This document shows positions 27,630 to 48,931 of a stretch of DNA of 64,000 bases, in pieces. The stretch lies in NCBI GenBank assembly GCA_963924565.1, contig OZ004608.1, positions 5,518,001-5,582,000 on the forward strand, written 5' to 3'. This DNA is from Ascidiella aspersa. Its lineage: Eukaryota. The position numbers and the translations under genes were made by a program. Position 1 is the stretch's first letter; every line of letters starts with the position of its first letter. The notes below the pieces were generated by a model that saw only the letters and a list, made by a program, of their open reading frames with translations, was not told the origin of the DNA and ran no database searches.

Positions 27630-29464
27630 CAGTGTTTCTTAACCTTTTTCACCCCAGGGCGCACCTGTAAACCTTTCGAAACGTGGCGGTGCACCTGACG
27701 AGCGAGTCGACTGCTAACTTTGTTTTTTGCTGGCAGTTTTTATTACATCAGGCTCCCAATTCTATTATATATTAAACAGCTTGCGGAGTCGGTTAAAAAT
27801 AACCCGACTCCAACTCCCGAATCCGACTCCGGCCAAATGTGTGATTTCGTCAAATTCCGAGTCCGTCTGCAAACCTACAGCATTTAATTTTCCCATTTAC
27901 GTAACTAAATTAAGGTGGATTTTCAACAATCCCTTCATAGGGGTGTTATATCTCATCCAACCACAATACATTGCTGGAAAATATCCACGATATGCTATTT
28001 CGCCATTTTAATTTGCATTTGGCGGCATTATTAGTTCAAAAATTGGCACTGCGCACGTCGGACTCGGGACTCGGGACTCCATCAGTCCGATTTCAGCAAA
28101 ATAAATCGATTACAGTACGCCGAGTCTCAAAAACTACACTGACCTGCTATAAAATACGATGTGCTCAATAAGACATAACCTAAAAAGAAAGAAAATAAAT
28201 GAAATAGGCCATTCATGTTGTAAATTATGAAAACATACCGTATGTTAGTTAAAGTTCGATGGAAACACAGAATAAGCCCCAAGAGCAACAACATCTAACT
28301 CGGAATAAATCCAAAATGTAACGGAAAAAAACTAATAATGCCCAAAACTGTAAAAAAAACAGGGTATGGGACGATTAAAGGACATATTCTTGGCATCGGC
28401 CGTTTTTGTGCCATAGTGTTAGGGCACAGGATTGTTTGCCTCTGTTTGGGGTTAGGCGCGAGTAATGGGTAGAATTATAATTTGGGGGGAGTTTGTATTG
28501 AAGTTATGGGTGGGGTTTGGGTAGGGTTCCTCTTTTCCCCACATTTTTTTACACCCGGGAAACGGGATTGACAAATGAAACTTCCCGGGAATCCTGACGA
28601 AATTTTCGTGCCCTAATTACGTCATTATGATGATTAAAATTACTTTATATTAGCTCCAAACGTTTAATTAAGCTCATTTATGTTCTGTAGTATTGCTTCT
28701 GCAATCTTACAAGACGTTCTCGTATTAACGTCAGCACCCTTATTTGTTTTTTTTAGAAAACACGCGCATATTAGGCGTTTTTTTATTGGTAAAATAAATT
28801 TAATTACGTTTTTCCGCTGGTAAGCGCAAAAAAAGCAACTCAAGCAACGACTTTAATAGGTTTGGCAACATTTTTTTCTTTATATTAGTCAAAAACGATA
28901 ATTTTTTTTAAGTTTTGCTATGTTGCCGAATAACCGGGATTATAAAAAAAATTTCCCGGGATTCGGGATCGTTATTTCGCGGGAAAGCCCGGGAATTTCC
29001 CGTCGAAACATTCCCGGAGAGGAACCCTAGGTTTGGGGTTAAGTAAAAGGTAGGAAAGGCCTTATTCTTGCCATTTAGGCCTTATTCGGACGAATTGAGG
29101 TCTTATTTTGATTTAAACGCTATTACGAGTATTAGGTATTAGTCCTATTTTGGTCTTACTCCGAACTGTTTTATATGTCGAAGTAGCTGTTGCTTTAATT
29201 GTGGTCTTAAGGCGGAAGCCCCACTAGATTGCAATAGTTCCTCTTTTTTTGTTAGCTAAGAGCCAACATCAACCATTGGCACTTCAATAAGGGCTACGAA
29301 TCCAGTCATATTGCTCAGTGTTTATTCACAGAAAATAGTGACTAGAGTTTATTCTAAAATTATTCGCAAATTCTACAAATAATACAGAATTTTTGTAACA
29401 TTTTTTCCCATTTTCTCGCGGTGCACCTGGCCACCTTCCACGGCGCACCGGTTGAGAAACGCTG
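27630..29464. mobile_element. Non-autonomous composite hAT element, 1835 bp
   Basis: TIRs cagtgtttcttaacc / ggttgagaaacgctg; exact 8-bp TSD CTGTAGAG; empty site visible in P1. Confidence 0.92.
28522..29029. mobile_element. Nested hAT MITE with TAGGG termini, 508 bp
   Basis: TIRs tagggttcctct / agaggaacccta; exact 8-bp TSD GGTTTGGG; subterminal CCCGGGA motifs. Confidence 0.9.
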
Positions 29465-32451
29465 CTGTAGAGTGTAGACAGTGTTGGTGATTTGAAAGTT
29501 GTGACGCAATTTCGCGTCAAGACGTATAGAAATTCTGGTAAATGCTTCCACGTCCTCATCACTTCAACTATAGAGGTTACTTTTTATGAAGCTGCAACCT
29601 GCTTGGCCGAAAAGTTCGGTCCTGATGTTGTAAGATGGTTAGGCCGTTGCACCGATCCTCAAATATGGCAAGATTCTTGGCAAAGATATTATGATTGCGC
29701 TATTGTGCATAATGTTTCTGCAATAATTATTCGGCGACGTCGATTGTGACTATACAATTTGACGCAATAGTAAAATACAAACCATATTTAATTTGTACGC
29801 TTTTGTATTGGTGCTCGCTACAGAAAAAATGCAGCAAATTGAGAGTACACAATGCAACTAAGAGAAGTTTTTGGCAATAAAATGGGGACGTTTTTAAAAT
29901 GTCATCAATATTTGTGGCCAGAGCCGGATCTAGGCACGGGACCATGGTCCCCAAACTATATATTTTGCTAATTTTAACTATACCTAAGTAAAAAAACAAA
30001 TAGTTTTAGTATGTATAGCCCATTTTAAGGGTAACTTTGCAGACTTCCTTGAGGTATGACGTCACAAATTTCATCATAACGTGACGTCATAAAACATTTA
30101 ACCTTAGAAAAGCTGTTTTTTTCTAGCGCACAATCCTTCGCCCAAATGGAGCTGTAATACAGTCCAATAGGTTAATGGTATAGCAAAGGGTAAAAAAAAA
30201 CTATACGTTACGCATAAAGCACATAAAAAAGAGTCTTGCATATGTTCCGAAACAAAGGAATTTATCGTACAATTTAGCAAAAAATACGCTTTACGAAGTT
30301 TATGAGCGACACGATGCAACATACGACGAGCCAAATTCCAAGTGGGCTAAAAAGATTTTCGAAAAATGGACGAAAACGTTGTAACATGGATAGATGCTTG
30401 CCAAACGTTTTTGTAATACCGTGATAAAAGTAAAAATATATAAGAATCTATTTTGTGGGCATGGCCCTATGGCTCCACCTCTCTTGATTAGCGCCAGACA
30501 CTTTCAAAGGACTCGTGTGAAGTTTCAAAGTGCTTAGTGTTCAACCGCTTTAAATATGCCGTATTCAACACCGGCAACCAATAAACAGCTATTTCAAATC
30601 AAGGGGAAGTTGCTACGTAACCTCACGTGACTGCTCTTAAAACCGCCTATTGGCTGGAATAGGCGTCATTTCGGAGGTCACGCGTACCTCGTGCCACTTG
30701 ATAACGTTAAAGAGAACGCTGACTATAAAGAAGGGCATACTCAATAAGACCTACAAGGCAACAATATCTAAAGCGGAATAGTCTTTAATACCGTAGTTTT
30801 ACGACCAACGACATAATAAAGCCAAATACAAAGTAATATCCATGACAGAATAAGATCTAAATCGTCTAAAAATTATCCACGCCAGATATACATACGTGTG
30901 TTTTTAAATAAACATATATTACATATCCATAATAAAGCCACATATAGCAATATCCACGACAGAATAAGATCTAAATCGTCTAAAATTCCAACCGTCAAAC
31001 ATCTCCCAACCGACAATTAAACCGCCACTGTGGTATCTTTTCACATCTAGGAAGACAATACCCTAGTAACCTGGTCATACAAGTACTTACAGAAGGCAAA
31101 TTTATATGTCGTCCACATTCCCAATGTTTCGAGAAATTCCTATTCCCTAACTTTTATCGCTTTGGCACGTTTGTCGTCCTTAAATTAAGTTCTACCCATG
31201 ACTGATTTTTTAAATACGTCAACAGTCGAACAAAAAACATCTAACAACCATCCATTAGTAGCGCACGTTTAATTCGCGAAAGCGAATGATCCTTATAATA
31301 TTGTTTTTGTGCAAATAAAAACAAAATGCTGCGCCAAAGTTTTGGTAATTGTTTCGAGAAAGTCGTTTGTGGGGACAACTTGGCAAACATTTCACTATGC
31401 ACATTCAGTAACCAGATTTTACTCCGCATTTGTCCAAAGATACAGCGTAATATATCTGCTAACAATTAACTCATTAATATCTGCGGAAGTCTTGTTGCGT
31501 ATGCATAGACGCGTTTCCTGTAGGTGTATGCAAGTATAATTACGTTAAGTAAGAACACTAGCCCTATTCTATATACTGGTTTACGTTTAATCATATGAAT
31601 TTGATAGTCATTTATTTTTTTGTATTAAAGTAGATTATAGTCTCTGCGTGCGCACCAGGCATAGACGTGTTTGCTGTACGTTAATAAATAGATAATACAT
31701 GTGACGTATCTATTTTTTGTTTGTATCATATTCTGGTTTTCTAAACGATATTGTTCGAGTTTCTTAAGACTCATGCAGCCATCATTACCTTATGAAATCG
31801 TGGTAAAATATTACTAAATATGGTGTAATAGGGACAATTAGTGTGTGTTTTCGCAGTTGAAACAGTTTGTCTAGACTTTTCTGTCTTGGTAATAGGAAGT
31901 CATTTGTAAGTTCCACTGGTTCATGAAGTATATTTCGCCACAAAACACGGCATCATCAGTCTCTTAATGAAATACAATTTATTTGAAATTTATAGCTTCT
32001 ATTCGAATAAGAGACTGTTGTCTTATTTTGTTGCGAAATATATTTCTCTTTTAAGCGATTAAAACTTATAAATGACTGACGTTGACCAAGACAGGAAAGT
32101 CTACTCTAAAGAAGAGTTGCTTCCATTTGAAGTCGTCATTTATTTGTAAGGGCGACGAGACATCTTCATATTTTACACAATCAGTTTGCCATTGATACAG
32201 TTATGGTTGCCTTTAAAACGAGGTAAAGCGCTTAGCAATGTCAAAACAGGGCCCCATTCGGTTTAAATACCTGGTTTAAGCTTTGCGTGTTCTTATAGTC
32301 ACAATCTTTTTACCTGAATTATTTACGTATTTTCTTGCTGCATTTATTTGGCTTTAACTCGCTCCACTATTTTGGTCAGACAGGTATTTTCCAATTGTTT
32401 GAAAAAAACAGCTTTTATTGATTGTTTGCTGCTGTTCCGATAAAGATAAAA

Positions 32452-33045
32452 ATGGAGAAAATGTGGCATTTTACCTTTCCTGTTCAGAGGATTCTACGGC
32501 GATACGAAAACGGAAACGAAGAATTGTACTCGAAATGCGGGATGCTAGACGGAACAATGTGGTACGTGGAGTTTGGGCCGGTTGCCAGTGATACCCACCT
32601 GGCTGGAAATTGTGGATTGCTGAAGGTGTCAGCCAACCCGAACGGCCAACCCGAACCCATTCCGTCTTGTTGGAATGAAGTGGATTGTGCTCTTAAGAGA
32701 ATATTCACAGAAGCTCACGACACGGAAAATAAAGTAGTTGCATTCCGATCTGAATACAGCCCTACAATGAAGAAGAATATTGCCTTCACACTTCGGGGCC
32801 AGGGAATGGAAAAGTTCTGCGGTCGTGAAGAAACATATGTAGGATCAAATGGCTCTTGGGAGGTTGAGACGCATGGCGCGGTGACGCATTATGATTATTC
32901 TGGTAAAGGTGTTCACGGTCTAATTACTTCGGCGAATGGAATCGATTTGAACGAAGCTGCCAGCTACTTGACCAGCAAGTTCCCTGGCTTGGTGAGATGG
33001 GTTAGCCGTTGCGTTAACCCCGAAGGGTGGCAATACTCTTGGTAG
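32452..33045 (+). CDS. Array gene C2, 197 aa
   Basis: Protein identical to C1. Confidence 0.85.
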   Translation: MEKMWHFTFPVQRILRRYENGNEELYSKCGMLDGTMWYVEFGPVASDTHLAGNCGLLKVSANPNGQPEPIPSCWNEVDCALKRIFTEAHDTENKVVAFRSEYSPTMKKNIAFTLRGQGMEKFCGREETYVGSNGSWEVETHGAVTHYDYSGKGVHGLITSANGIDLNEAASYLTSKFPGLVRWVSRCVNPEGWQYSW

Positions 33046-36000
33046 CAATTAAAAATCTTCGGATTGTGCAGATAAAATACAACAGTTTAATTCGCTGATC
33101 TTTAATATATCCCTTTTAACGCAAAATTTAAAAACATGCGATTATCAATTTGTTTTAGTATCGAGGCTTAATTGTGTTTGTCTAAAATGTTTAATGAATA
33201 ATCTTGCATAAGTAATCGTGCTCCTGAAATGATTATTTATATTTGTTCGTTATGTGCTTCTTCAAATACTTAAAGAAAACCTTGCTTTTACGAAATTTAA
33301 ATATAAAGATAACTGTTCACTTAACGTTTGCATGTTTATCGCCTCGTCTGCGTGCTTAAGTATTTCTGCAATTGGATTTCGCATCTACAGTTTTTCACCA
33401 CCTACTTTATAGCTGTGTATAACCACAAGTATACAAAATCAGCTGATGTAGAATTACCGAACCGAGATAAAGTAAATAATTCATGAGATATGTGTGTTTG
33501 TTTTTTGTCGCATTATATATTCAAGTGTGTATCAATTGTAGCTGCCTAAACAATAAAATTGACTTGTTAAATCATCGTGATTGTTCACATTCTGTAAGCT
33601 TTGTTTCCGGTCATGTCATAGTTATGGATAGTTATAATTATATCAATTCATTGCGATTTATTAGGAAGCCTTGTAAATAGGGAAATTAAACTTAAGCCTC
33701 TTGCGTTATGGTGAGAAATTGTAAGAGGAATATGGATGCCCCGAGGAATATGGATGCCGATATATCCATTTTACCCATAGCTTCCAAACGTAGCGTGTAA
33801 ACTAAATATAAAATTGTAACTAAATATAAGGTAACGCTAATGTAAATGACGTCATTTGACATGGAATAAGTTACTTATTCAGTACATTTTGCCCCAAAAC
33901 TTGGGTATCAATATCGCAACCCACTACGTACTATTAATAAAGGTAACCTCGCGATTGTTAGTTCCATCCCAATTTGCAAAAAACCCTACCCCAACAGTAA
34001 CCCTACAACACATATACACAAGGTCTGTTGTCTGGCGTTCGCATAGCATGTAGCCATAGACAAAAACTTACAGCTGTTAGCTTTGTGAAGCGTTTGCCGC
34101 TATTCAATTTATAAATAAATAAATAAATTTAATTCTGCCCCTTTAGATTCCACGCTTTTTCTCATAAAGATATTCTTACATAAAGTTATTGAAATCAAAG
34201 TAAAATGATATTATAGTTACTGCAATAGTTAAAATTAGTATAGTTTATCTGTCCTTTTTTGCTCAAACTAGTTACTTCTTATTCAAGCCAATACGAAGTT
34301 ATTTTTGTCATATTAACCTCCGCCTTACAAAATACCCTTTGACCCCGAGATGAATATTTATTTTATTACACAACGCAAGCATTCTTTCTTACGAGAGCAA
34401 GGTTTCGTCGTAAAACAAATAAAAGCTTTTACTATGTTGGTAATTTGCAACTACTAGTCGTAAGCGATGGCTTATATAATTGCAATCTAAAAATCAAAAG
34501 ACATTTAATTGCAATCTAAAAATAAACCGGGGATAAAAAGGATTATTAGAAGGTTGTTTGAATTTATGCATTTATTGAGAAATTGTCCGACTTTGTATAG
34601 GCGTAAATTGCAGACACGCAATTTTATTCTCAAACCTTTGGGTTTGCAGTCCACTAAATATTAGCGGCAAAATCCCTGCAAAACACGTTACAACTGTCCC
34701 TAGCAAACTGTATATAAGGCAATAGCCTAATTATCATTAATTTTGTAGTGGAATTTATCATTACTTTTTGTAGCACTTTTGTAGTGGAGTGTGCATTTTG
34801 GTCGCACGAGTACCCATTTTCTTATTTGTTACACATAAGTTATTTTTCAAACTTACAAAACTTTCACGGCACGCAGTTTAAGAATAGCTGACTTTAAATG
34901 TCGTTTAACCACGTACTGATAGTAGTTCTTACAATAATTTGTTGGGGGCTTTTCGAATGTATAATATTGAAATGCTACTGATATAGGGTGTAAGCGAACA
35001 GGCGTATTCTGAGAATCACCAAATTCAACAAGTTTCTGCGGGCCACTGTGGCACTCTCGTACTTTACCACTGCCCCAAGACAAGGTTCTTTTTACCAACA
35101 TATTTATCGCCCCGTCTGCGTGCTTTAGTATTTTCGTAATTGGTTTTCGCATCTATAGCTTCTCACCACCTACTTTATAGCTGTGCATAACCACAGGTAT
35201 ACAAAATCAGGTGATGTAGAATTACCGAACCGAGATAAAGTAAATAAATCATATGATGTGTGTGTTTGTGTTTCGTCGCATTATATATTCAAGTGTGTAT
35301 CAATTGTAGCTGCTTAAACAATAAAGTTTACTTGTCAAATCGTCTTGATTGTTCACATTCTATATGCTTAGTTTCCGGGCATATTATAGTCATGTATAGT
35401 TTATTAACATATCGATTCTTAGCGATTTATTAGGAAGCCTAATAAAAAGATAAATTCAACTTAATCCCCTTTTGTAACGGTGTGAAATCGTAACAGGAAT
35501 ATGGATTCCCGTTATTATTAAATTTAAATTGATCCCCGATCTTGAGTGGCAATATCGGTACTCGTTCGATTCTTGGAAAGCATCATGTCAAATCCTAAAA
35601 CAAACCGATATACCAATTTCAACCATGACTTATGCGATCCAACGTATCGTTTCGTTTTTAAGCAATTTAGAACAAAACATATTAACCAACTATGGGAAAC
35701 GCCAATGTAAATGACGTCATTTGACATGGAATAAGTTACTTATTCAGTACATTTTATCCCCAAACTAGGGTATCGATTCGGACCGTAATACCTACTACAA
35801 ACAGAGGGTTACCCCGCTATTGTTAAATCTATTCCAATTTACAAAAATACATTACCCCCAACAGTCCCTACAACACATATACACCGGGTTTTTTGTCTGT
35901 CATTTACATAGCCTGTGACCATAGACATAAACTAACGCTTTTGACCTTGTGAAGCGTTTGCGGTTATTAAATTTATTTGTACCCTTTTAGATTTTATGCT

Positions 36001-37736
36001 TTTTTTGCTTAAATATATTATTACAAAAAGTCGTTGAAATCGAAGTGTAATAATATTATAGTTACTGCAATAGTTATAATTAGTATAGCTTATCGGTCCT
36101 AACATAGATTTTTGATTTAAAATGCTTATTTCTAGTTTCTTCAAGCCAATACGAACATATTCTTGTCATATTAATCTCCGCCTTACAAATACTGTTCAGG
36201 CGCAAAATAATATTTGTTTTATTACACAAAGCAAGCATTCGTACTAACGAGAGCAAGGTTTCGTCGTAAAACAAATAAAACCTTATGTTGCTAATTTGTA
36301 ACTATTAGTCGTTAGCGATGGCGTTTGACAAGCGTGTGGGTGATTTCTCACAGCCAGTTATCGGCAGGTAAGAAGCAACTTTGGACTGTATGCGTAAAGT
36401 TGCATGTGAAACAGATTCTTAGCTCGCACAAATAGATTTAAAACTTAGTTTTAAACACCGAAGATCCTGGCCAATCAGCTAGGTCAGTGGTTCCCAAACT
36501 GTGGGCCATGGCCCAGGAGTGGGACACAAGAATATTTTCAGTGTGCCGTGGAGCTATTTGTAAATATTGCAACCAAATATGTTTTGTTTTTCTAAAATAA
36601 TTGTTAGCATATCTAAAACCATATAGGCATAAGACCAATATCCATATTGTTGACAATTTGCGAACTTTACACGAAAAGGCGAAGTCTCACGGCATATGTT
36701 TTTTAACTACGCAATTAGCACGGTAGTTTACTTTAAATTCCAGATGTTTTCGTAGAAAGATATTTATTTCCAAAAAATGAACCGGGTGTGAAAAGGATTA
36801 CTTGAATGTTATTTGAATCAATTCATTTATTGAGAAATTTTCCGACTTTTTAGGCGTAAATTACAGACATGCAATTTTATTCTCAAACATTTTTGGTTTG
36901 CGGTCCACTAAAATAATCGCGGCAAAATCCCTGCAAAACACGTTACAACTGTCCCTAGCAAACTGTATATAAGGCAATAGCCTAATTATCATTACTTTTG
37001 TAGTGGATAGTGTGCATTTAGGCCCGCATGCTTGTCTATTTTCCTATTTGTTACACATTAGTTAATTTTTAAACTTACAAAACTGACTTTAAATGTCGTT
37101 TCACCCCGTGCTGATAGTAGTTCCTACAATAATTTTTTTGGGGCTTTTCAAATGTCTAATATTGAAATGCTACTGATATAGGGTGTAAGCGAACCGGCGT
37201 ATTCTGAGAATCACCGAATTCAACAACTTACTGCGGGCCACTGTGGCACTCTCGTACTTTACCACTGCCTAAAGACAAGGTTCCTTTTACCAACAATTAG
37301 GATCGCTATAAGGCGGAATCGATTTTTTGCTGGGCAGGGACGTCAGATGTTGACACACAGCCGTGACGTCATATATATATATAAGCAGTACGACATCGTA
37401 TATCGATTCAACAACGCTATACAGCCGAAAGACCATTTGTTAATACAGCGGTTCTGTATATTTCCAGTTCGACTGACAAAAATCTCGCATAAATCAGCTC
37501 AGACTTAACAAATTAGCTCAAAACCGTTCTTAAAAATCCTGCTTGACGGTTCGAATCCCTGGTTTAAGCTTTGCATTTTCTTAGGCAGAATTGTTTTGCC
37601 TAGGTTATTTTAAGTCTTTTCTTGCTGCATTTAGTTGGCTTTAACTCGCTCTACTATTTTAGTCATGCAGGAATTTTTCAATTGTTGAAAAATCACCATT
37701 TGTTTGTTGATTGCTGCTGTTCCGATAAAGATAAAA

Positions 37737-38330
37737 ATGGAGGAAGTCTGGCATTTCACCTGTTCCGTTGAGGGGATTCGATCGCGATACAAAAACGGAA
37801 ACGAAGATTTTTACTCGGAGAAGGGAATGGAAGACGGAACAATGTGGCACGTGGAGTTTGGGCCGGTTGACGACGACGACGAAAATGGCGACTATGATGA
37901 TAATCAGCTGGCTGGAACTTGTGGATTGCTGAAGGTCTCAGACAGCCAGGCCATTCCTTCTTACTGGAAAGACGCGAAATGGGCTGTGAAGCGAACTATC
38001 ACCGAAGCTGACTCGATTGAAAAAAGTGAAAGCGAATTCGTGTCCGAATACAGCGATATAATGATGAAGAATATCGCCTTCACTCTTCGGGGCCAAGGAA
38101 TGGAAGAGTGCTGTAATGTTGAAGCCAGTATTGGCAGATTGCAGGTTGTTACGCATAGTGAGGTAAAGAAGTATGCTACTACCGGCAAAGGCGTACATGG
38201 TCTCATAAGTTCTGCAAATAAGGTTACTATGTACGAAGCTGCAACCTGCTTGGCCGATAAGTTCGGTTCTGGCGTTGTGAGATGGTTAGGCCGTTGCACC
38301 GATCCTGGAAGATGGCAGAATTCCTGGTAG
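37737..38330 (+). CDS. Array gene AB, chimera with A-type N half and B-type C half, 197 aa
   Basis: N half matches A2 (TCSVEGIRSRYK, ENGDYDD); sequence after IAFTLRGQ matches B1. Confidence 0.85.
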   Translation: MEEVWHFTCSVEGIRSRYKNGNEDFYSEKGMEDGTMWHVEFGPVDDDDENGDYDDNQLAGTCGLLKVSDSQAIPSYWKDAKWAVKRTITEADSIEKSESEFVSEYSDIMMKNIAFTLRGQGMEECCNVEASIGRLQVVTHSEVKKYATTGKGVHGLISSANKVTMYEAATCLADKFGSGVVRWLGRCTDPGRWQNSW

Positions 38331-41300
38331 CCGTATTAGAATTGTGATATTGTGCATAATGTTCAAGTCAATTATTCGGCAACCTTGATTGTGATTATAC
38401 CACTTTAATGCAATATTAAAACACAAACCTTACTAATTTGAACGCTTTGTATTGCTTCGGTGTTCGCTACAGAAAAGAAGGCAGTAATTTGATAGCGCAC
38501 ATTAAAGAGCTTTTATCAATAAAATTGGGGCGTTTTTAAAAGGTCATTATGATTTGTTGCCAGAGCCGGACCCAGAGTGGCACGAGGTCACGACCCCCCA
38601 AACAATATTTTTGCTAATTTTACCACCTATAACCTAAGTAACAAAATAAATAGTTTTATAGTTATAATAAGTTATTCTGGTATTTATTTGTCTTACTTTT
38701 AGTAAATTATTCTTGCATAAGAAATCGTGCTCCTGTAATGATTATTCATATTTGTTCGATATGTGCTTCTTCAAATCACCAATGAAAACCTTGCTTTCAC
38801 GAAATTTAAATATAAAGATAACTGCGCATTCAACGTTTGCATATTTATCATCCCGTCAGCGTGCTTTAGTATTTTCGTAATTGGTTTTCGCATCTATAGC
38901 TTCTCACCACCTACTTTATAGCTGTGCATAACCACAAGTATACAAATCTGAGTGATGTAGAATTACCGAACCGAGATAAAGTAAATATTTCATGAGATAT
39001 ATATGTGTTTGTTTTTTGTCGCATTATATATTCAAGTGTGTATCAATTGTAGCTGCCTAAACAATAAAATTGACTTGTTAAATCATCATGATTGTTCTCA
39101 TTCTGTAAACTAAGTTCCCGGACATAACATAGTTATGGATAGTTACAATTATATCGATTCATTGCGATTTATTAGGAAGCCTAATGAATACATAAGAACA
39201 ACTTAATCCCCTCATTTTGAAATCGTAACAGGAATATGGATTCCCGATATTATTAAACTTAAACAGATCTCCGATCTTGAGTGGCAATATCGGTACTCGT
39301 TCGATTCTTTGAAAGCATCATGTCAAATCCTAAAACAAACCGATATACCAATTTCAACCATGACTTATAAGCCAAATACGCAAGCCAATACCTACTATAC
39401 AAAAGGTTACTTGTTAGTTCCATCCCAATTTGCAAAAATACATTATACCCAACAGTAACCCTACAACTCATACACACTATAGGTCTATTGTCTGTCGTTC
39501 ACATAACCTATGGCCATATACAGAAACAATTACCTTTTAGACTTGTGAGGCGTTTGCGGCTATTATATTTATTTAAGCCCCTTTAGGATTTATGCTTTTT
39601 TTGCTTAAAGGTATTACTACAAAAGTCGATAAATTATAAGTAAAATAATATTATAGTTATGGCAATAGTTAGTATATTTATCTGCCCTAACACAGTTTTG
39701 TGCTTTAAAACGCTTATTCTTGTTCCTTCTCAAGCCAATACGAAATTATTCTTGTCATGTTGAGCTCCGCTTTGCAAATACAGTTTGACAGCGAGAAAAA
39801 TATTTGTTTTATTGCACAACGCAAGCATTCTTTCTCACGAGAGCAAGGTTTCGTCGTAAAACAAAAAAAGCTTTAACTATGTTGCTAATTTGTAACTATT
39901 AGTCGATAGCGATGGCGTTTGACAAGCGTATAAGTGATTTCTCACAGCCAGTTATCGGCAGGTAAGAAGCAACTTTTAACTCTATGCGTAAAGTTGCATG
40001 TGAAACAGATTCTTAGCTCCCACAAATAGATTTAAAACTTAGTTTCAGAAACCGAAGATCCTGGCCAATCAGCTAGGTCAGTGGTTCTCAAACTGTGGAC
40101 CATGGCCCGGGAGTGGGACACAAGACTATTTTCAGTGTGCCGTGGAGCTATTTGTAAATATTGCAGCTAAATATGTTTTGTTTTTCTAAAATAATTGTTA
40201 GCATATCTAAAACCATATAGGCATAAGACCAATTTCCATATTGTTGACAATTTGCGAACTTTGCACGAAATGGCGAAGTCTCACGGCATATGTTTTTAAC
40301 TACGCAATTAGCACGGTAGTTTACTTTAAATTCCAGATGTTTTCGTACAAAGATATTTATTTCCATAAATGAACCGGGTGTGAAAAGGATTACTTGAATG
40401 TTATTTGAATCAATTCATTTATTGAGAAATTGTCCGACTTTGTAGGCGTAAATTACAGACATGCAATTTCATTCTCAAACATTTTTGGTTTGCGGTCCAC
40501 TAAAATAATCGCGGTAAAATCCCTGCAAAACACGTTACAACTGCCCCTAGCAAACTGTCTATAAGGCAATAGCCTAATTATTATTACTTTTGTAGTGGAT
40601 AGTGTGCATTTAGGCCCGCATGCTTGTCTATTTTCCTATTTGTTACACATTAGTTATTTTTCAAACTTACAAAACTGACTTTAAATGTCGTTTAACCCCG
40701 TGCTGATAGTAGTTCTTACACTAATTTTTGGGGACTTTTCGAATTGCTAATATTGAAATGCTACTGATATAGGGTGTAAGCGAACAGGCGTATTCTGAGA
40801 ATCACTGAATTCAACAACTTACTGGGGGCCACTGTGGCACTCTCGTACTTTACCACTGCCCCAAGACAAGGTTCTTTTTACCAACTATTACTCAATATTC
40901 GTGTTTGTCGAACAAACTGGAAATTGTCGAACAAACTGGAAAAACTAAATCGAACATTCGCATCTTATGCTTTGGCGCACTTTACTTGGATATAAGCATA
41001 CTTAATCATATTGCACCTATACCCGCTAAAGTTCGACTAACAACAGCATTTTTTTTAAGTTTTTTACATGAGATAACTCTCGTGACGTATGATTAAAACT
41101 TAGTTGATTAATAAAAGTTGTTCTGTGCACTCACATAGTAAAACAAAATTGGTCGAAAAGTATTTCGTAAGCAGCGAAATTATTAATTGACACCACAACT
41201 TACACACGAAAGGCTGCAGAATTCGTAAGCGCTTCTAAGGTAACATTTCGAGTAGTTATAGGTTCAATTAGGATCGCCATAAGGCGTAATCGATTTTTTG

Positions 41301-42303: not shown

Positions 42304-43516
42304 CAATCTTCGCTTAATACAACACTTTAATTCGCTGATCTTTAATATTTCCCTTTTAACGCAATATTGAAACACATGCGATTAACAATGTTTATCAGTA
42401 TTGTTTGTTTCTGTCTATTGGTTAACAAATAATCTTACCTAATCGTGCTCCTGTAATGATTATTCATATTTTGTCGTTATGTGCTTCTTAAAATACCTAA
42501 CGAAAATCATTCTTCAACGAAATTTCAATATAAAGATAACTGCGCATTCAACGTTTATATGTTTATCGCCTCGTCTGCGTGCTTTTCTATGTTCGTAATT
42601 GGTTTTCGCATCTATAGCTTTTCACCACCTACACTATAGCTGTGTATAACCACAAGTATACAAAATCAGGTGATGTTGAATTACCGAACCGAGATGAAGT
42701 AAATATTTCATATGATGTGTGTGTTTGTTTTTTGTCGCATTATATATTCAAGTGTGTATCAATTGTAGCTGCTTAAACAATAAAATGTAATTGTTAAATT
42801 ATCGTGATTGTAAATTTAATTCAAAAAATTGTAACTTAATATACGTTAATGCTAATGTAAAATGACGTCATTTAACATGGAATCAGCTAGTCTTAAAATG
42901 TGTGCCGTGGAAGTTTTGTAAGTTTGAAAAATAACAAATGTGTAACACATAGGAAAATAGGCAAGCATGTGAGACTAAATGCACACTATCCATTACAAAA
43001 TTAATGATAATTAGGCTATTGCCTTATATACAGTTTGTTAGGGACAGTTGTAACGTGTTTTGCGGGGATTTTGCCGCTAATATTTTAGTGGACTGCAAAC
43101 CAAAAGGTTTGAGAATAAAATTGCGTGTCTGCAAATTTGGCAACGAAGCGTTGTACTCAGAAACCGGAATGAAGGACGGCGAAATGTGGCAGGTGAATTT
43201 TGGCCCAGTCGACGTCAATGATGACGATGACAGTAAAGATAACGTAGACGATAACGTAGAGGATGACTTCGATGATGAAGTCGACGATGATGACCAACTA
43301 GTTGGAATTTGTAGATTGCTGATGATATCTGACCTCCAGGCCATTCCGACTCATTAGGAAAAGGTGGAATGGGCTGTGAAGCGAATTTTCACCGAAACTC
43401 GGTACATTAAAGAAAGTGAAAGCGAATTCGTGTCCAAATACAGCGATACAATGATGAAGAATATTGCCTTTATACTCAGGGGCGAAGGAATAGAAGAGTT
43501 CTGCAATGCTGTAGAG

Positions 43517-45351
43517 CAGTGTTTCTTAACCTTTTTCACCCCAGGGCGCACCTGTAAACCTTTCGAAACGTGGCGGCGCACCTGACGAGCGAGTCGACTG
43601 CTAACTTTGTTTTTTGCTGGCAGTTTTTATTACATCAGGCTCCCAATTCTATTATATATTAAACAGCTTGCGGAGTCGGTTAAAAATAACCCGACTCCAA
43701 CTCCCGAATCCGACTCCGGCCAAATGTGTGATTTCGTCAAATTCCGAGTCCGTCTGCAAACCTACAGCATTTAATTTTCCCATTTACGTAACTAAATTAA
43801 GGTGGATTTTCAACAATCCCTTCATAGGGGTGTTATATCTCATCCAACCACAATACATTGCTGGAAAATATCCACGATATGCTATTTCGCCATTTTAATT
43901 TGCATTTGGCGGCATTATTAGTTCAAAAATTGGCACTGCGCACGTCGGACTCGGGACTCGGGACTCCATCAGTCCGATTTCAGCAAAATAAATCGATTAC
44001 AGTACGCCGAGTCTCAAAAACTACACTGACCTGCTATAAAATACGATGTGCTCAATAAGACATAACCTAAAAAGAAAGAAAATAAATGAAATAGGCCATT
44101 CATGTTGTAAATTATGAAAACATACCGTATGTTAGTTAAAGTTCGATGGAAACACAGAATAAGCCCCAAGAGCAACAACATCTAACTCGGAATAAATCCA
44201 AAATGTAACGGAAAAAAACTAATAATGCCCAAAACTGTAAAAAAAACAGGGTATGGGACGATTAAAGGACATATTCTTGGCATCGGCCGTTTTTGTGCCA
44301 TAGTGTTAGGGCACAGGATTGTTTGCCTCTGTTTGGGGTTAGGCGCGAGTAATGGGTAGAATTATAATTTGGGGGGAGTTTGTATTGAAGTTATGGGTGG
44401 GGTTTGGGTAGGGTTCCTCTTTTCCCCACATTTTTTTACACCCGGGAAACGGGATTGACAAATGAAACTTCCCGGGAATCCTGACGAAATTTTCGTGCCC
44501 TAATTACGTCATTATGATGATTAAAATTACTTTATATTAGCTCCAAACGTTTAATTAAGCTCATTTATGTTCTGTAGTATTGCTTCTGCAATCTTACAAG
44601 ACGTTCTCGTATTAACGTCAGCACCCTTATTTGTTTTTTTTAGAAAACACGCGCATATTAGGCGTTTTTTTATTGGTAAAATAAATTTAATTACGTTTTT
44701 CCGCTGGTAAGCGCAAAAAAAGCAACTCAAGCAACGACTTTAATAGGTTTGGCAACATTTTTTTCTTTATATTAGTCAAAAACGATAATTTTTTTTAAGT
44801 TTTGCTATGTTGCCGAATAACCGGGATTATAAAAAAAATTTCCCGGGATTCGGGATCGTTATTTCGCGGGAAAGCCCGGGAATTTCCCGTCGAAACATTC
44901 CCGGAGAGGAACCCTAGGTTTGGGGTTAAGTAAAAGGTAGGAAAGGCCTTATTCTTGCCATTTAGGCCTTATTCGGACGAATTGAGGTCTTATTTTGATT
45001 TAAACGCTATTACGAGTATTAGGTATTAGTCCTATTTTGGTCTTACTCCGAACTGTTTTATATGTCGAAGTAGCTGTTGCTTTAATTGTGGTCTTAAGGC
45101 GGAAGCCCCACTAGATTGCAATAGTTCCTCTTTCTTTGTTAGCTAAGAGCCAACATCAACCATTGGCACTTCAATAAGGGCTACGAATCCAGTCATATTG
45201 CTCAGTGTTTATTCACAGAAAATAGTGACTAGAGTTTATTCTAAAATTATTCGCAAATTCTACAAATAATACAGAATTTTTGTAACATTTTTTCCCTTTT
45301 TCTCGCGGTGCACCTGGCCACCTTCCACGGCGCACCGGTTGAGAAACGCTG
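43517..45351. mobile_element. Duplicate of the 1835-bp hAT element
   Basis: Same TIRs, same TSD CTGTAGAG and same site, so copied by segmental duplication. Confidence 0.92.
44409..44916. mobile_element. Duplicate nested TAGGG-terminus MITE
   Basis: Same TIRs and TSD GGTTTGGG. Confidence 0.9.
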
Positions 45352-48337
45352 CTGTAGAGTGTAGACAGTGTTGGTGATTTGAAAGTTGTGACGCAATTTC
45401 GCGTCAAGACGTATAGAAATTCTGGTAAATGCTTCCACGTCCTCATCACTTCAACTATAGAGGTTACTTTTTATGAAGCTGCAACCTGCTTGGCCGAAAA
45501 GTTCGGTCCTGATGTTGTAAGATGGTTAGGCCGTTGCACCGATCCTCAAATATGGCAAGATTCTTGGCAAAGATATTATGATTGCGCTATTGTGCATAAT
45601 GTTTCTGCAATAATTATTCGGCGACGTCGATTGTGACTATACAATTTGACGCAATAGTAAAATACAAACCATATTTAATTTGTACGCTTTTGTATTGGTG
45701 CTCGCTACAGAAAAAATGCAGCAAATTGAGAGTACACAATGCAACTAAGAGAAGTTTTTGGCAATAAAATGGGGACGTTTTTAAAATGTCATCAATATTT
45801 GTGGCCAGAGCCGGATCTAGGCACGGGACCATGGTCCCCAAACTATATATTTTGCTAATTTTAACTATACCTAAGTAAAAAAACAAATAGTTTTAGTATG
45901 TATAGCCCATTTTAAGGGTAACTTTGCAGACTTCCTTGAGGTATGACGTCACAAATTTCATCATAACGTGACGTCATAAAACATTTAACCTTAGAAAAGC
46001 TGTTTTTTTCTAGCGCACAATCCTTCGCCCAAATGGAGCTGTAATACAGTCCAATAGGTTAATGGTATAGCAAAGGGTAAAAAAAAACTATACGTTACGC
46101 ATAAAGCACATAAAAAAGAGTCTTGCATATGTTCCGAAACAAAGGAATTTATCGTACAATTTAGCAAAAAATACACTTTACGAAGTTTATGAGCGACACG
46201 ATGCAACATACGACGAGCCAAATTCCAAGTGGGCTAAAAAGATTTTCGAAAAATGGACGAAAACGTTGTAACATGGATAGATGCTTGCCAAACGTTTTTG
46301 TAATACCGTGATAAAAGTAAAAATATATAAGAATCTATTTTGTGGGCATGGCCCTATGGCTCCACCTCTCTTGATTAGCGCCAGACACTTTCAAAGGACT
46401 CGTGTGAAGTTTCAAAGTGCTTAGTGTTCAACCGCTTTAAATATGCCGTATTCAACACCGGCAACCAATAAACAGCTATTTCAAATCAAGGGGAAGTTGC
46501 TACGTAACCTCACGTGACTGCTCTTAAAACCGCCTATTGGCTGGAATAGGCGTCATTTCGGAGGTCACGCGTACCTCGTGCCACTTGATAACGTTAAAGA
46601 GAACGCTGACTATAAAGAAGGGCATACTCAATAAGACCTACAAGGCAACAATATCTAAAGCGGAATAGTCTTTAATACCGTAGTTTTACGACCAACGACA
46701 TAATAAAGCCAAATACAAAGTAATATCCATGACAGAATAAGATCTAAATCGTCTAAAAATTATCCACGCCAGATATACATACGTGTGTTTTTAAATAAAC
46801 ATATATTACATATCCATAATAAAGCCACATATAGCAATATCCACGACAGAATAAGATCTAAATCGTCTAAAATTCCAACCGTCAAACATCTCCCAACCGA
46901 CAATTAAACCGCCACTGTGGTATCTTTTCACATCTAGGAAGACAATACCCTAGTAACCTGGTCATACAAGTACTTACAGAAGGCAAATTTATATGTCGCG
47001 ACATTCCCAATGTTTCGAGAAATTCCTATTCCCTAACTTTTATCGCTTTGGCACGTTTGTCGTCCTTAAATTAAGTTCTACCCATGACTGATTTTTTAAA
47101 TACGTCAACAGTCGAACAAAAAACATCTAACAACCATCCATTAGTAGCGCACGTTTAATTCGCGAAAGCGAATGATCCTTATAATATTGTTTTTGTGCAA
47201 ATAAAAACAAAATGCTGCGCCAAAGTTTTGGTAATTGTTTCGAGAAAGTCGTTTGTGGGGACAACTTGGCAAACATTTCACTATGCACATTCAGTAACCA
47301 GATTTTACTCCGCATTTGTCCAAAGATACAGCGTAATATATCTGCTAACAATTAACTCATTAATATCTGCGGAAGTCTTGTTGCGTATGCATAGACGCGT
47401 TTCCTGTAGGTGTATGCAAGTATAATTACGTTAAGTAAGAACACTAGCCCTATTCTATATACTGGTTTACGTTTAATCATATGAATTTGATAGTCATTTA
47501 TTTTTTTGTATTAAAGTAGATTATAGTCTCTGCGTGCGCACCAGGCATAGACGTGTTTGCTGTACGTTAATAAATAGATAATACATGTGACGTATCTATT
47601 TTTTGTTTGTATCATATTCTGGTTTTCTAAACGATATTGTTCGAGTTTCTTAAGACTCATGCAGCCATCATTACCTTATGAAATCGTGGTAAAATATTAC
47701 TAAATATGGTGTAATAGGGACAATTAGTGTGTGTTTTCGCAGTTGAAACAGTTTGTCTAGACTTTTCTGTCTTGGTAATAGGAAGTCATTTGTAAGTTCC
47801 ACTGGTTCATGAAGTATATTTCGCCACAAAACACGGCATCATCAGTCTCTTAATGAAATACAATTTATTTGAAATTTATAGCTTCTATTCGAATAAGAGA
47901 CTGTTGTCTTATTTTGTTGCGAAATATATTTCTCTTTTAAGCGATTAAAACTTATAAATGACTGACGTTGACCAAGACAGGAAAGTCTACTCTAAAGAAG
48001 AGTTGCTTCCATTTGAAGTCGTCATTTATTTGTAAGGGCGACGAGACATCTTCATATTTTACACAATCAGTTTGCCATTGATACAGTTATGGTTGCCTTT
48101 AAAACGAGGTAAAGCGCTTAGCAATGTCAAAACAGGGCCCCATTCGGTTTAAATACCTGGTTTAAGCTTTGCGTGTTCTTATAGTCACAATCTTTTTACC
48201 TGAATTATTTACGTATTTTCTTGCTGCATTTATTTGGCTTTAACTCGCTCCACTATTTTGGTCAGACAGGTATTTTCCAATTGTTTGAAAAAAACAGCTT
48301 TTATTGATTGTTTGCTGCTGTTCCGATAAAGATAAAA

Positions 48338-48931
48338 ATGGAGAAAATGTGGCATTTTACCTTTCCTGTTCAGAGGATTCTACGGCGATACGAAAACGGA
48401 AACGAAGAATTGTACTCGAAATGCGGGATGCTAGACGGAACAATGTGGTACGTGGAGTTTGGGCCGGTTGCCAGTGATACCCACCTGGCTGGAAATTGTG
48501 GATTGCTGAAGGTGTCAGCCAACCCGAACGGCCAACCCGAACCCATTCCGTCTTGTTGGAATGAAGTGGATTGTGCTCTTAAGAGAATATTCACAGAAGC
48601 TCACGACACGGAAAATAAAGTAGTTGCATTCCGATCTGAATACAGCCCTACAATGAAGAAGAATATTGCCTTCACACTTCGGGGCCAGGGAATGGAAAAG
48701 TTCTGCGGTCGTGAAGAAACATATGTAGGATCAAATGGCTCTTGGGAGGTTGAGACGCATGGCGCGGTGACGCATTATGATTATTCTGGTAAAGGTGTTC
48801 ACGGTCTAATTACTTCGGCGAATGGAATCGATTTGAACGAAGCTGCCATCTACTTGACCAGCAAGTTCCCTGGCTTGGTGAGATGGGTTAGCCGTTGCGT
48901 TAACCCCGAAGGGTGGCAATACTCTTGGTAG
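48338..48931 (+). CDS. Array gene C3, 197 aa
   Basis: As C1 except AASYL>AAIYL. Confidence 0.85.
   Translation: MEKMWHFTFPVQRILRRYENGNEELYSKCGMLDGTMWYVEFGPVASDTHLAGNCGLLKVSANPNGQPEPIPSCWNEVDCALKRIFTEAHDTENKVVAFRSEYSPTMKKNIAFTLRGQGMEKFCGREETYVGSNGSWEVETHGAVTHYDYSGKGVHGLITSANGIDLNEAAIYLTSKFPGLVRWVSRCVNPEGWQYSW

What the first reader, a model, noticed from the sequence alone, without database searches (positions are those of the whole stretch)
37737..38330. Combinatorial shuffling of N and C halves near the conserved KNIAFTLRGQ block
Seen: there are two N-half types (N1 with an acidic loop in A, B, P; N2 in C, D) and two C-half types (C1 'THYD..GVHGLITSAN..W.YSW' in A, C, D; C2 'KKY/KTY..RCTDP..WQ[ND]SW' in B, P). 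The 5' flanks of intact genes follow the N half and 3' flanks follow the C half. A is therefore best read as an older N1+C1 recombinant, and AB as a recent A2-like N half joined to a B C half. The switch lies at or just before the block shared by all intact types, which is also the proposed domain boundary. N2+C2 is missing from this window. Inference: unequal crossover here generates in-frame domain combinations.
Basis: partly seen in the sequence, partly recalled or inferred. Interest (0 to 1): 0.75.

Follow-up and report, generated by a model that had tools for sequence, protein, structure and literature searches.

The report
Mosaic paralogs in a sea-squirt gene array
A tandem array of small, uncharacterised sea-squirt genes has swapped its front and back halves between copies by ordinary recombination between repeats, and the gene in question is a real three-part patchwork, not a clean two-part join.

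Summary
The window carries 11 intact intronless ~197-aa paralogs and 6 copies of a pseudogene, P. Front halves (with 5' flanks) and back halves (with 3' flanks) give conflicting trees (AU p 0.0016 and 3e-5). Synonymous divergence shows the same: A-B 0.12 in front, 0.96 behind; A-F 0.41 in front, 0.05 behind. A GARD-like scan puts the best single breakpoint at 38094, inside the KNIAFTLRGQ codons.

- The gene at 37737-38330 is identical to A2 up to 38004 and to B from 38085. The 80 nt between differ at 6 sites from each and are closest to a third type, E, found outside the window.
- Its flanks are 2.4-4% from any other unit, while its body is at most 0.5% from its donors. That fits recent gene conversion on an older unit better than one fresh crossover at the block.
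- Other boundaries are scattered along the gene (Rm 48).
- At DNA level the block gives only 11-15 nt of identity between unlike types.
- N2+C2 is absent from the whole assembly.

The family has no Pfam or PDB match. The only named relatives are two ascidian proteins, one fused to a RIPK1-like kinase. The mechanism is of a known kind.

The parts
37737..38330 (+). AB gene: intact 197-codon ORF, a three-part mosaic
37350..38004 (+). Tract near-identical to A2 (promoter plus first 268 nt of the CDS): 2 of 653 mismatches in all, 0 of 268 in the CDS
38005..38084 (+). Intermediate segment. It has 6 differences from A2 and 5-6 from B. It is closest to E-type copies outside the window (1-2 of 100 mismatches over 38005-38105).
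38067..38096 (+). Codons of the conserved block KNIAFTLRGQ. AFTLR is nearly invariant in distant relatives. At DNA level the block is broken by synonymous differences at 38072, 38084 and 38096.
38085..38330 (+). Tract identical to B1-B3 apart from one site (38204): the C2-type back half
38331..38850 (+). B-type 3' flank, 2.9-3.1% diverged from B1/B2. No P pseudogene follows it.
35250..37349 (+). A-type upstream region of the AB unit, 2.4-3.8% from A1 and 4.0% from A3
12897..13517 (+). A1 (N1+C1). Its stop codon is lost (+9 aa) and it has a divergent, partly P-like patch.
17788..18381 (+). B1 (N1+C2)
22748..23341 (+). C1 (N2+C1)
25823..26416 (+). A2 (N1+C1), the closest relative of AB's front part
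32452..33045 (+). C2 gene copy (N2+C1), CDS identical to C1
41710..42303 (+). A3 (N1+C1)
48338..48931 (+). C3 (N2+C1)
51824..52417 (+). B2 (N1+C2)
56783..57355 (+). D (N2+C1)
60239..60832 (+). B3 (N1+C2), CDS identical to B1
14156..15040 (+). P1 pseudogene (long acidic loop, TAG stop, frameshifts, C2-like back half), after A1. Approximate ends.
19300..20382 (+). P2 pseudogene, after B1. Approximate ends; the 3' end includes flank homologous to B's.
27025..30008 (+). P3 pseudogene, after A2. About 1.8 kb lies between its two halves (27627 to 29463).
42912..45895 (+). P4 pseudogene, after A3, split in the same way (43514 to 45350)
53279..54417 (+). P5 pseudogene, after B2
61694..62648 (+). P6 pseudogene, after B3. 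Its N-terminal part is partly deleted.

Best explanation
What it is: a real, recently duplicated tandem array. It has an inverted sister array 30-120 kb upstream. It encodes a tunicate-restricted family of ~197-aa, apparently cytosolic proteins of unknown function.

How a unit is built: each repeat unit is two exchangeable cassettes between shared intergenic repeats. One cassette is about 450 nt of promoter plus the front half of the gene. The other is the back half plus 150-500 nt of 3' flank.

How it works: interlocus gene conversion and occasional crossing-over between misaligned units have moved these cassettes.
- One young front module (N1) now sits on three old back modules: A, E and B.
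- One young back module is shared by A, C, D and F, which have old, different front halves.

Why the boundary is where it is: the main boundary lies within about 70 nt around the KNIAFTLRGQ codons. Once that divergence cliff existed, later tracts that started in homologous sequence would have to end there. So the pile-up is partly self-reinforcing (inferred).

The gene at 37737-38330: it is a B-lineage or older chimeric unit. An A2-like conversion tract ending at 37999-38005 recently overwrote its promoter and first 268 nt. Its back half is kept or was re-homogenised with B. Its N1/C2 junction is probably the old B junction, not a new crossover.

Many shorter conversion patches, some apparently templated by the P pseudogene, add finer mosaicism.

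Shown: the mosaic, the conflicting trees, the dS contrast, the agreement of flanks with halves, and the layered divergence. Inferred: conversion rather than crossover, the direction of transfer, and the cliff effect.
For: Conflicting trees with support. Front half: {A, AB, B, E, P} 97/94 against {C, D, F, G} 94/96. Back half: {A, E, C, D, F, G} 97/99 and {B, AB, P} 89/90. AU tests reject the alternatives at p 0.0016, 3e-5 and 0.0065.

Synonymous divergence, front against back: A2-E4 0.065 / 0.42; A2-B1 0.12 / 0.96; B1-E4 0.084 / 1.04; A2-F1 0.41 / 0.05; C1-D 0.12 / 0.01. Selection on the protein cannot explain this.

Flanks go with halves. A and B units regain homology downstream: 7% divergence by about +900.

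GARD-like scan: best single breakpoint 38094 (AICc 8636.8 to 8288.6). The best AICc model adds 37944. Change points have narrow support: A2/B1 38091-38107, E/B1 38103-38114, A2/D 38042-38063.

AB layering (Fisher p 9e-6 and 0.03):
- 0 of 268 mismatches to A2.
- 1 of 225 to B.
- 2 of 385 in the promoter.
- Against 25 of 1048, 32 of 847 and 16 of 517 in the flanks.

A single-switch model leaves 6 mismatches; a three-source model leaves 3.

The AB-specific junction 31-mer is unique in the genome and lies in a short-read contig of run X1.

The genes look functional. There are 22 full-length, uninterrupted copies genome-wide (11 in the window; 11 outside). dN/dS is 0.25-0.6 in several comparisons.
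Against: - Conversion and crossover cannot be told apart from one haplotype.
- The lower divergence of AB's coding back half (1 of 225 against 16 of 517, p 0.03) could be purifying selection.
- The E-like identity of 38005-38105 is not significant on its own (1 of 100 against 5 of 100 and 7 of 100; p 0.21 and 0.06).
- My GARD-like scan used FastTree likelihoods on a 15-column grid. Its gains include differences in rate as well as in topology, and single-breakpoint scans favour central positions.
- The pairwise change points share ancestry. The clustering test (5 of 13 boundaries in 79 of 594 nt, p 0.02) treats them as independent, so it overstates the case.
- Part of Rm 48 may be recurrent mutation at this divergence.
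- Raw reads of another study (X7) gave almost no 99%-likeness coverage of 38014-38064. The exact AB haplotype may be absent from that animal.
- Expression evidence is one read pair (X8).
Confidence: 0.7

Rival explanations
1. Single unequal crossovers at a hot spot at or just before the KNIAFTLRGQ block, which is a protein domain boundary, create in-frame N/C combinations. AB is a recent A2 x B product, and A an older one.
For: - Best family-wide breakpoint at 38094.
- 24 of 32 clean significant triples break within 38067-38126.
- Change points at 38046-49, 38096 and 38114 imply at least 2-3 separate events within about 70 nt.
- Flanks co-segregate with halves.
- In the deep family alignment the block is an island of conservation between two indel-rich stretches. 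That would fit the first strand of a second structural unit.
Against: - AB's 80-nt junction zone matches neither parent; a single-switch model leaves at least 6 mismatches and places the switch at 38044-38056.
- AB's flanks are 2.4-4% diverged, so the unit is not recent.
- AB lacks the P that follows every A and B.
- A and B units are homologous on both sides of the differing cassette.
- The block gives only 11-15 nt of uninterrupted identity between B and C/D types.
- Further boundaries lie elsewhere.
- The 32 triples are mostly the same events counted again.
- No sequence similarity between the halves (hhalign probability 0.3%), and no structure was available.
Confidence: 0.2
2. AB is an assembly artefact: a false join of reads from A-type and B-type units in a repeat-rich array.
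For: - The array has near-identical copies (C1 = C2 and B1 = B3 in CDS).
- X7 raw reads at 99% likeness barely cover 38014-38064 (depth 0.18). They show the non-AB letter at 37693 (4 of 4 reads) and at 37516 (5 of 5 reads).
- The AB-unique 31-mers starting at 37975-37998 were not seen in X1 (bin depth 0), and X2 gave depth 8.4 in that bin.
Against: - The AB unit has its own divergence (2.4-4%) over more than 3 kb of flank on both sides, so it is a distinct locus.
- The junction 31-mer at 38076-38106 is unique in the genome and heads a 231-nt contig of X1 with no differences.
- X7 covers the AB-specific 3' flank 38371-38727 at 99% likeness with depth about 1-5.
- X7 comes from another study and may be another animal. 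At a mean depth of about 2.8, a bin without reads has a chance of about 0.06.
Confidence: 0.05
3. There was no recombination. The two halves only evolve at different rates or converge under selection.
For: dN/dS above 1 in some back-half comparisons (C1-D 6.6, A2-F1 2.8, C1-F1 2.5; small counts) shows that selection acts on the protein.
Against: - The contrast is as strong at synonymous sites and runs in opposite directions in different pairs.
- Non-coding flanks follow the adjacent half.
- AU tests reject a common topology.
Confidence: 0.02

Closest known systems
Chimeric fusion paralogs made by unequal crossing-over or gene conversion in tandem gene clusters. Examples: delta/beta-globin fusions (PMC4041002, seen as a search listing and the start of the abstract); CYP21A1P/CYP21A2 chimeras (PMC3161346, listing and start of the abstract); hybrid opsins and glycophorins (recalled, from no call).
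   Same: - The 5' part and 5' flank come from one paralog, the 3' part and 3' flank from another.
- The chimera is in frame because the parents are homologous.
- It sits in a tandem array with near-identical repeats.
- A pseudogene lies in the array and is a possible donor.
   Different: - Here the exchange involves several types in both directions: one front module on three back modules, and one back module on several front modules.
- It reaches across two inverted arrays.
- The focal gene has three parts and layered ages.
- The family itself is uncharacterised.
Interlocus (ectopic) gene conversion with tracts limited by sequence divergence. General reviews: PMC3924818 and PMC3924832 (search listing and start of the abstracts only).
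   Same: - Tracts of near identity (37350-38004; 38085-38330) lie inside more diverged flanks.
- Divergence between units is patchy.
- Boundaries pile up where homology ends.
   Different: Tract direction and non-reciprocity cannot be shown from one assembly. Some exchanges carry whole flanks and could be crossovers.
C-terminal region of the 'RIPK1-like' kinase of Phallusia mammillata (CAB3265597.1; name as given by the source)
   Same: Residues 375-544 match the family profile over positions 16-187 (E 4.2e-6). So the whole ~190-aa unit, both halves together, occurs as one module behind a protein kinase domain (Pfam Pkinase, residues 32-300).
   Different: The window's genes are stand-alone, have no kinase domain, and are amplified in an array. 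Identity is low. No function of that region is on record in anything I saw.

Membership tests
Lepore-type chimeric paralog (single unequal crossover between tandem paralogs) | 5' part and 5' flank from one paralog type, 3' part and 3' flank from another | tested here: met
Lepore-type chimeric paralog (single unequal crossover between tandem paralogs) | One switch point, with each side matching its parent equally well out into the flanks | tested here: not met
   The best single-switch model leaves 6 mismatches, 5 of them within 38005-38084. The gene body is 0-0.5% from its parents but the flanks are 2.4-4%.
Lepore-type chimeric paralog (single unequal crossover between tandem paralogs) | Downstream context of the 3' parent is kept (here: the P pseudogene after B), or a reciprocal product exists | tested here: not met
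   Every A and B is followed by P; AB is not. No reciprocal B-front/A-back gene is among the 50 genome matches.
Interlocus gene conversion tract | A stretch of near identity to a paralog, bounded on both sides by clearly higher divergence to it | tested here: met
   37350-38004 has 2 of 653 mismatches to A2. Upstream there are 5.0% mismatches to A2 (37151-37349). Downstream there are 7 of 100 (38006-38105).
Interlocus gene conversion tract | Non-reciprocal transfer (donor unchanged) | not testable with these tools
   This needs ancestral or population haplotypes.
Recombination hot spot at the KNIAFTLRGQ block | Independent breakpoints concentrated there beyond chance | tested here: inconclusive
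   Best breakpoint at 38094. At least 2-3 events lie within 38036-38114. The rough binomial gives p 0.02-0.14, depending on the count and ignoring shared ancestry. Other boundaries and Rm 48 are spread along the gene.
Two-domain protein with the boundary at the block | Two separately folding units that meet near residues 105-120 | not testable with these tools
The Atlas gave nothing. Only indirect evidence: the block is the lowest-entropy stretch, flanked by indel-rich columns.
   hhalign of the front-half profile against the back-half profile gave probability 0.3%. No Pfam family reached E 0.01 in 21 members. No PDB chain scored under E 0.7. The fold itself was not tested.
TRADD-N domain | Sequence match to Pfam TRADD_N or to solved TRADD-N chains | tested here: not met
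TRADD_N is not among the families listed at E up to 10 for 21 members. It is not among the PDB hits at E up to 10.
Tunicate ~200-aa 'AFTLR' family (unnamed) | Full-length profile match, with the NGN..LYS, W, AFTLR, G(L/V), L..F and W..C motifs kept | tested here: met
   25 proteins at E up to 1e-3, most of them matched over nearly the whole profile. In the alignment F102 is invariant and T103, L104, R105 are kept in at least 90% of rows. 2 of the 20 clusters looked up carry a name, and both are ascidian.

The most novel reading that the evidence does not exclude
The locus is a diversity-generating array for a tunicate-specific cytosolic sensor or adaptor module. In another ascidian the same module hangs on a RIPK-type kinase. 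Promoter-plus-front-half and back-half-plus-3'-flank would act as exchangeable cassettes, a resident pseudogene would serve as a conversion donor, and positive selection on the back half would keep new combinations. That would be an innate-immune or self/non-self recognition repertoire built by module swapping.
Probability: 0.12. Interest if true: 0.7.

Novelty: new member of a known kind. Interest (0 to 1): 0.4.

Why it matters
The case is clean and quantified. In a tandem family, a front module with its promoter and a back module with its 3' flank are reassorted between paralogs. Synonymous-site contrasts reach eightfold or more, in both directions. It also shows how a divergence cliff can look like a hot spot, a caution for anyone mapping breakpoints in paralog arrays.

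The family has no Pfam or PDB match, and I found nothing on it in the papers searched. The only two named relatives are ascidian proteins. It is amplified, and parts of it have dN/dS above 1. One relative is fused to a RIPK1-like kinase. That makes it a reasonable candidate for an immune or recognition function worth a structure and an expression study. The recombination mechanism itself is textbook.

Tried and rejected
Steps that led nowhere
- Pfam on 4 window proteins, on 10 distant hits and on 21 aligned members gave no family for this domain.
- A profile search of PDB sequences gave nothing under E 0.7.
- The word-based protein search found no hit within 0.55-1.75 times the query length.
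- The ESM Atlas gave an error for the window protein and no usable hit for P0003.
- A scan of bacterial and archaeal genomes with a 7-member alignment found no relative.
- Two metagenome scans found nothing: the family alignment and a degenerate DNA pattern of the block. So no other haplotypes were obtained.
- Literature: four searches found no paper on this family or its motifs.

Ideas considered and dropped
- The block as the longest DNA identity tract that guides recombination. It gives only 11-15 nt between unlike types.
- B as the recombinant instead of A and E. P goes with B in the back half and 3' flank, and with all of N1 in the front half, so A/E moving needs the fewest unseen lineages.
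- The X2 contig 38042-38102 as proof of AB. The same 61-mer occurs in three E copies.

Rows left out
- Trees: E5x and G2x (disrupted 5' ends). Of the P copies only P2 and P5 were used.
- GARD-like scan: also B3 and C2 (identical duplicates) and all P copies.
- P3 and P4 (split copies) were not aligned at all.

Slips
- The first GARD-like run failed to read its likelihoods. I re-read them from its log files.
I added it and sent the same report again.
Full report
WHAT IS THERE

The window has no N, and its GC content is 34-40% in 2-kb windows. It is G000:C2:5518001-5582000 of a 308.6-Mb, 75-contig assembly. Earlier notes of this scan call the genome a sea squirt (unchecked). That fits my results: the only two named relatives of the family are ascidian proteins.

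Of the 14 ORFs of at least 120 aa, 11 are full-length paralogs of 190-207 aa, all on the + strand. From ATG to stop they are:
- A1 12897-13517
- B1 17788-18381
- C1 22748-23341
- A2 25823-26416
- C2 32452-33045
- AB 37737-38330
- A3 41710-42303
- C3 48338-48931
- B2 51824-52417
- D 56783-57355
- B3 60239-60832

Six copies of a pseudogene, P, follow every A and every B. None follows AB, C or D. P has a long acidic loop, a TAG stop and frameshifts.

A six-frame search of the whole genome gave 50 matches.
- 49 lie on C2 between 5.40 and 5.60 Mb, and one remote copy (30% identity) lies on C4.
- An inverted array at 5.40-5.487 Mb holds further intact types that I call E, F and G.
- Two diverged copies, O1 and O2, serve as outgroups.

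THE OBSERVATION

- N1, with the acidic loop, occurs in A, AB, B, E and in longer form in P.
- N2 occurs in C, D, F and G.
- C2 (KKY/KTY, RCTDP, WQ[ND]SW) occurs only in B, AB and P.
- C1 occurs in all the others.

At nucleotide level AB has these parts.
- It is identical to A2 over 37737-38004 (0 of 268 mismatches).
- It matches B over 38106-38330 (1 of 225 mismatches), against 58 of 216 for A2 there.
- The last A-only site is 38084. The run of B-only sites starts at 38096, within the L-R-G-Q codons of the block; K is at 38067.
- The triple test for AB with parents A2|B1 gives a corrected p of 9e-14.

Flanks follow halves.
- 5' flank, -300 to -1: A/AB/B are 95-99% alike, E 85-92%, C/D 74-76%.
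- 3' flank, +300: AB/B are 96-97% alike and at noise level (52-62%) to all others. A is 86-90% to E, 83-88% to F and 76-78% to C/D.

N2+C2 is absent from the whole assembly.

IS AB REAL?

The single read-laying run used 37300-38800 at 99% likeness.
- Run X1 (Logan contigs; kind not on record) has a 231-nt contig over 38076-38306 with no differences.
- Its first 31-mers, those starting at 38076-38084, are AB-specific.
- The first one occurs exactly once in the genome. Five E copies and three B copies are each one mismatch away.
- The X2 contig 38042-38102 is not specific, because three E copies hold the same 61-mer.
- The other AB-unique 31-mers (starts 37975-37998) were not seen in X1 (bin depth 0). 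X2 had depth 8.4 in that bin. The tool warns that holes prove nothing.
- X7, raw Illumina DNA of another study read at about 1 in 100, has depth in 30 of 30 bins but only 0.18 over 38014-38064.
- X7 shows A at 37693 in 4 of 4 reads and A at 37516 in 5 of 5 reads.
- X7 covers AB's own 3' flank (38371-38727) at depth about 1-5.

So the B-like flank lineage is present in that animal. The exact junction haplotype is not shown there; a read-free bin has a chance of about 0.06 at that depth. X8 (RNA) gave one read pair on 38116-38319, which is thin evidence of transcription of a C2-type gene.

AB is also a distinct locus. Its flanks are 2.4-4.0% from any other unit over more than 3 kb. I put an assembly artefact at about 5%.

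AB IS NOT A CLEAN TWO-PART JOIN

Between the A2-identical and the B-identical parts lie 80 nt (38005-38084). They differ at 6 sites from A2 and at 5-6 sites from B.
- The best single-switch A x B model leaves 6 mismatches in 591 nt. It places the switch at 38044-38056, before the block.
- Adding an E-type source lowers this to 3.
- E copies match 38005-38105 with 1-2 mismatches in 100. B has 4-5 and A2 has 7. These differences are not significant on their own (p 0.21 and 0.06).

The unit is layered.

| Segment of the AB unit | Compared with | Mismatches |
|---|---|---|
| 35250-36299 | A1 | 25 of 1048 |
| 36300-37149 | A1 | 32 of 847 |
| 37350-37736 | A2 | 2 of 385 |
| 37737-38004 | A2 | 0 of 268 |
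| 38106-38330 | B | 1 of 225 |
| 38331-38850 | B | 15-16 of 517 |

The body is less diverged than the flanks, with Fisher p 9e-6 on the 5' side and 0.03 on the 3' side. The near-identical 5' tract includes about 390 nt of non-coding promoter, so selection on the protein does not explain it.

The simplest reading is an older unit with an A-type upstream region and a B-type downstream region. A recent A2-like conversion tract, ending at 37999-38005, then overwrote its promoter and first 268 nt. On that reading AB's N1/C2 junction may just be the old junction of the B lineage (E/B change point 38103-38114). AB then adds no independent event at the block.

AB also lacks the P that follows both supposed parents. 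Its T1 repeat is B-like up to about 38850 and C/D-like after that. That would fit loss of P by recombination between the direct repeats that flank it, which is inference.

THE FAMILY-WIDE PATTERN

Trees (IQ-TREE GTR+F+G4, 24 rows; E5x, G2x and four P copies left out):
- Front half: {A, AB, B, E, P} 97/94 against {C, D, F, G} 94/96.
- Back half: {A, E, C, D, F, G} 97/99 and {B, AB, P} 89/90.

AU tests:
- They reject the C1 set as a clade in the front half (p 0.0016).
- They reject the N1 set (p 3e-5) and N1+P (p 0.0065) as clades in the back half.
I assigned E, F and G from the protein alignment before building the trees.

Because P goes with B behind and with all of N1 in front, A and E are the types that change partner. 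This supports 'A is an N1+C1 recombinant'.

Synonymous divergence makes the point independently of selection.

| Pair | dS, front half | dS, back half |
|---|---|---|
| A2-E4 | 0.065 | 0.42 |
| A2-B1 | 0.12 | 0.96 |
| B1-E4 | 0.084 | 1.04 |
| A2-F1 | 0.41 | 0.05 |
| A2-C1 | 0.38 | 0.13 |
| C1-D | 0.12 | 0.01 |

So one young front module sits on three old back modules, and one young back module is shared by genes with old, different front halves.

WHERE THE BOUNDARIES LIE

The GARD-like scan used FastTree likelihoods, 20 rows, 564 columns and a grid of 15 columns.
- The best single breakpoint is 38094 (AICc 8636.8 to 8288.6), on a plateau over 38049-38109.
- The best AICc model adds 37944.
- AIC keeps improving with 37797, 38199 and 38244.

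Pairwise change points with 2-log-likelihood support:
- A2/B1 38096 (38091-38107)
- E/B1 38114 (38103-38114)
- A2/E 38096 (38046-38106)
- A2 against C1, D, G1 38046-38049
- A2/F1 38182
- A1/F1 38150
- C1/D 38246
- B1 and E4 against F1 37807-37820
- G1 against C1, D, F1 37834-37909

Triple scan: of 2,637 triples, 405 were significant and 32 were clean. Of the clean ones, 24 break in 38067-38126, 4 in 38007-38066 and 4 in 37797-37826. These are largely the same few events seen again.

Hudson-Kaplan Rm is 48 from 169 informative sites, spread over the whole gene. Part of that may be recurrent mutation.

Overall there is a dominant module boundary within about 70 nt around the block, reflecting at least 2-3 separate events. 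There are also many smaller boundaries elsewhere. A rough binomial for the clustering gives p 0.02-0.14, depending on the count and ignoring shared ancestry.

WHY THERE?

At DNA level the block is not a long identity tract. Synonymous differences at 38072, 38084 and 38096 cut it into pieces of 11-15 nt. The longest identity between B and C/D anywhere in the gene is 20 nt. That explains mechanically why N2+C2 is missing. It also makes a homology-driven hot spot inside the block unlikely today.

N1-bearing units share about 95% identity over roughly 800 nt that ends at the block. Any conversion or branch migration that starts there must stop at the cliff, so later events inherit the first boundary (inference).

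A and B units are also homologous again downstream, at 7% divergence by about +900. They therefore differ by a replaced cassette: the back half plus 150-500 nt of 3' flank. That points to conversion or a double exchange, not to a single unequal crossover.

Divergence between the two arrays is patchy throughout, from 1% to 19% for A against E.

THE PROTEIN

- No Pfam family matches, and no PDB chain scores under E 0.7.
- A profile search of 1.84 billion representatives found 25 proteins at E up to 1e-3, 4 at up to 1e-10 and none at up to 1e-30. Most are about 200 aa and are matched along nearly the whole profile.
- Of the 20 clusters looked up, 2 carry names. One is an unnamed Clavelina lepadiformis protein. 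The other is a Phallusia mammillata 'RIPK1-like' protein.
- In the Phallusia protein a kinase domain (residues 32-300) is followed by this module (residues 375-544).
- Several relatives share contigs, which suggests clusters in other species too.
- AFTLR is the most conserved motif of the deep alignment. It has the lowest column entropy and lies between indel-rich stretches.
- The halves show no similarity to each other (hhalign probability 0.3%).

A TRADD-N-like fold (passages of PMC8195603 read) is only an idea, and nothing supports it.

The genes look functional. The ORFs are intact, and dN/dS is 0.25-0.6 in many comparisons. Among A, C, D and F the back half shows dN/dS of 1.2-6.6, on small counts.

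COMPARISON AND VERDICT

This is the known kind of event that makes hybrid globin or CYP21 genes (search listings and the start of the abstracts seen). Here it is multi-way and sits in an uncharacterised tunicate family. Four literature searches found no paper on the family.

Modular exchange with a main boundary at the block holds. A recent clean crossover for AB, a hot spot and a domain boundary are not shown.
- Interest is 0.4.

Noticed in passing
window 34990-35120 (junction at 35099/35100): Just upstream of the AB unit lies a B-type unit without a gene. Sequence 99-100% identical to B's upstream region runs to B-840 and then joins directly to B+1101. About 1.94 kb is missing: the promoter, the whole gene and the 3' flank. 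The overlap at the junction is a single base. It is either a recent non-homologous deletion or an empty site.
   Followed up: partly
window 12897-13517 (A1), patch at the positions that align to AB 37958-38022: A1 is 11-14% from the other N1 genes in this part and is the gene closest to P there (17-18%). Sites 37958-37968 and 38010-38015 carry P's letters, while 37994-38004 is private to A1. This suggests conversion templated by the neighbouring pseudogene. A1 has also lost its stop codon (+9 aa) and reads into the same tail (WKSSLN.TL) as the G-type copies.
   Followed up: partly
window 27627-29463 and 43514-45350: P3 and P4 are each split by about 1.8 kb of extra sequence at the same place. 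The P copies after B and after A1 are not split. I did not examine the insert.
   Followed up: no
G000:C2:5399973-5486433 (loci L005, L008-L010, L012-L015, L017, L018, L022): An inverted sister array on the minus strand holds types E (N1-like front, its own C1-like back), F and G. Two copies (E5x, G2x) have disrupted 5' ends.
   Followed up: partly
L010, L012 and window B1-B3 (AB coordinates 37743-37820): E4, E5x and the B genes share their first 64-84 nt with F.
   Followed up: partly
window 56783-57355 and 22748-23341 (D against C): The back-half comparison has 0.5 synonymous against 11.5 non-synonymous differences (dN/dS 6.6). The last 79 nt are identical. A2-F1 (2.8) and C1-F1 (2.5) behave alike. 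Counts are small.
   Followed up: partly
G000:C2:5388587-5388958 and 5424493-5424852 (minus strand): Kinase-domain fragments with stop codons (40-41% identical to the Phallusia RIPK1-like kinase) lie beside and inside the inverted array.
   Followed up: no
G000 C3:32.6-37.9 Mb and C2:2.4-2.8 Mb: The genome holds large tandem expansions of related kinase domains in these two stretches.
   Followed up: no
window 7060-7464 (minus strand): A 134-aa ORF has a cysteine-rich start and a GIY-YIG-like stretch. The motif name is recalled and not tested. It may be part of a mobile element.
   Followed up: no
window 38289: In the raw DNA reads of X7, 4 of 7 reads show T instead of G in the C2-type back half. 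Depth over 38116-38217 is only about 2, although the assembly holds four matching copies. Copy number or sequence of B-type genes probably differs between animals.
   Followed up: no
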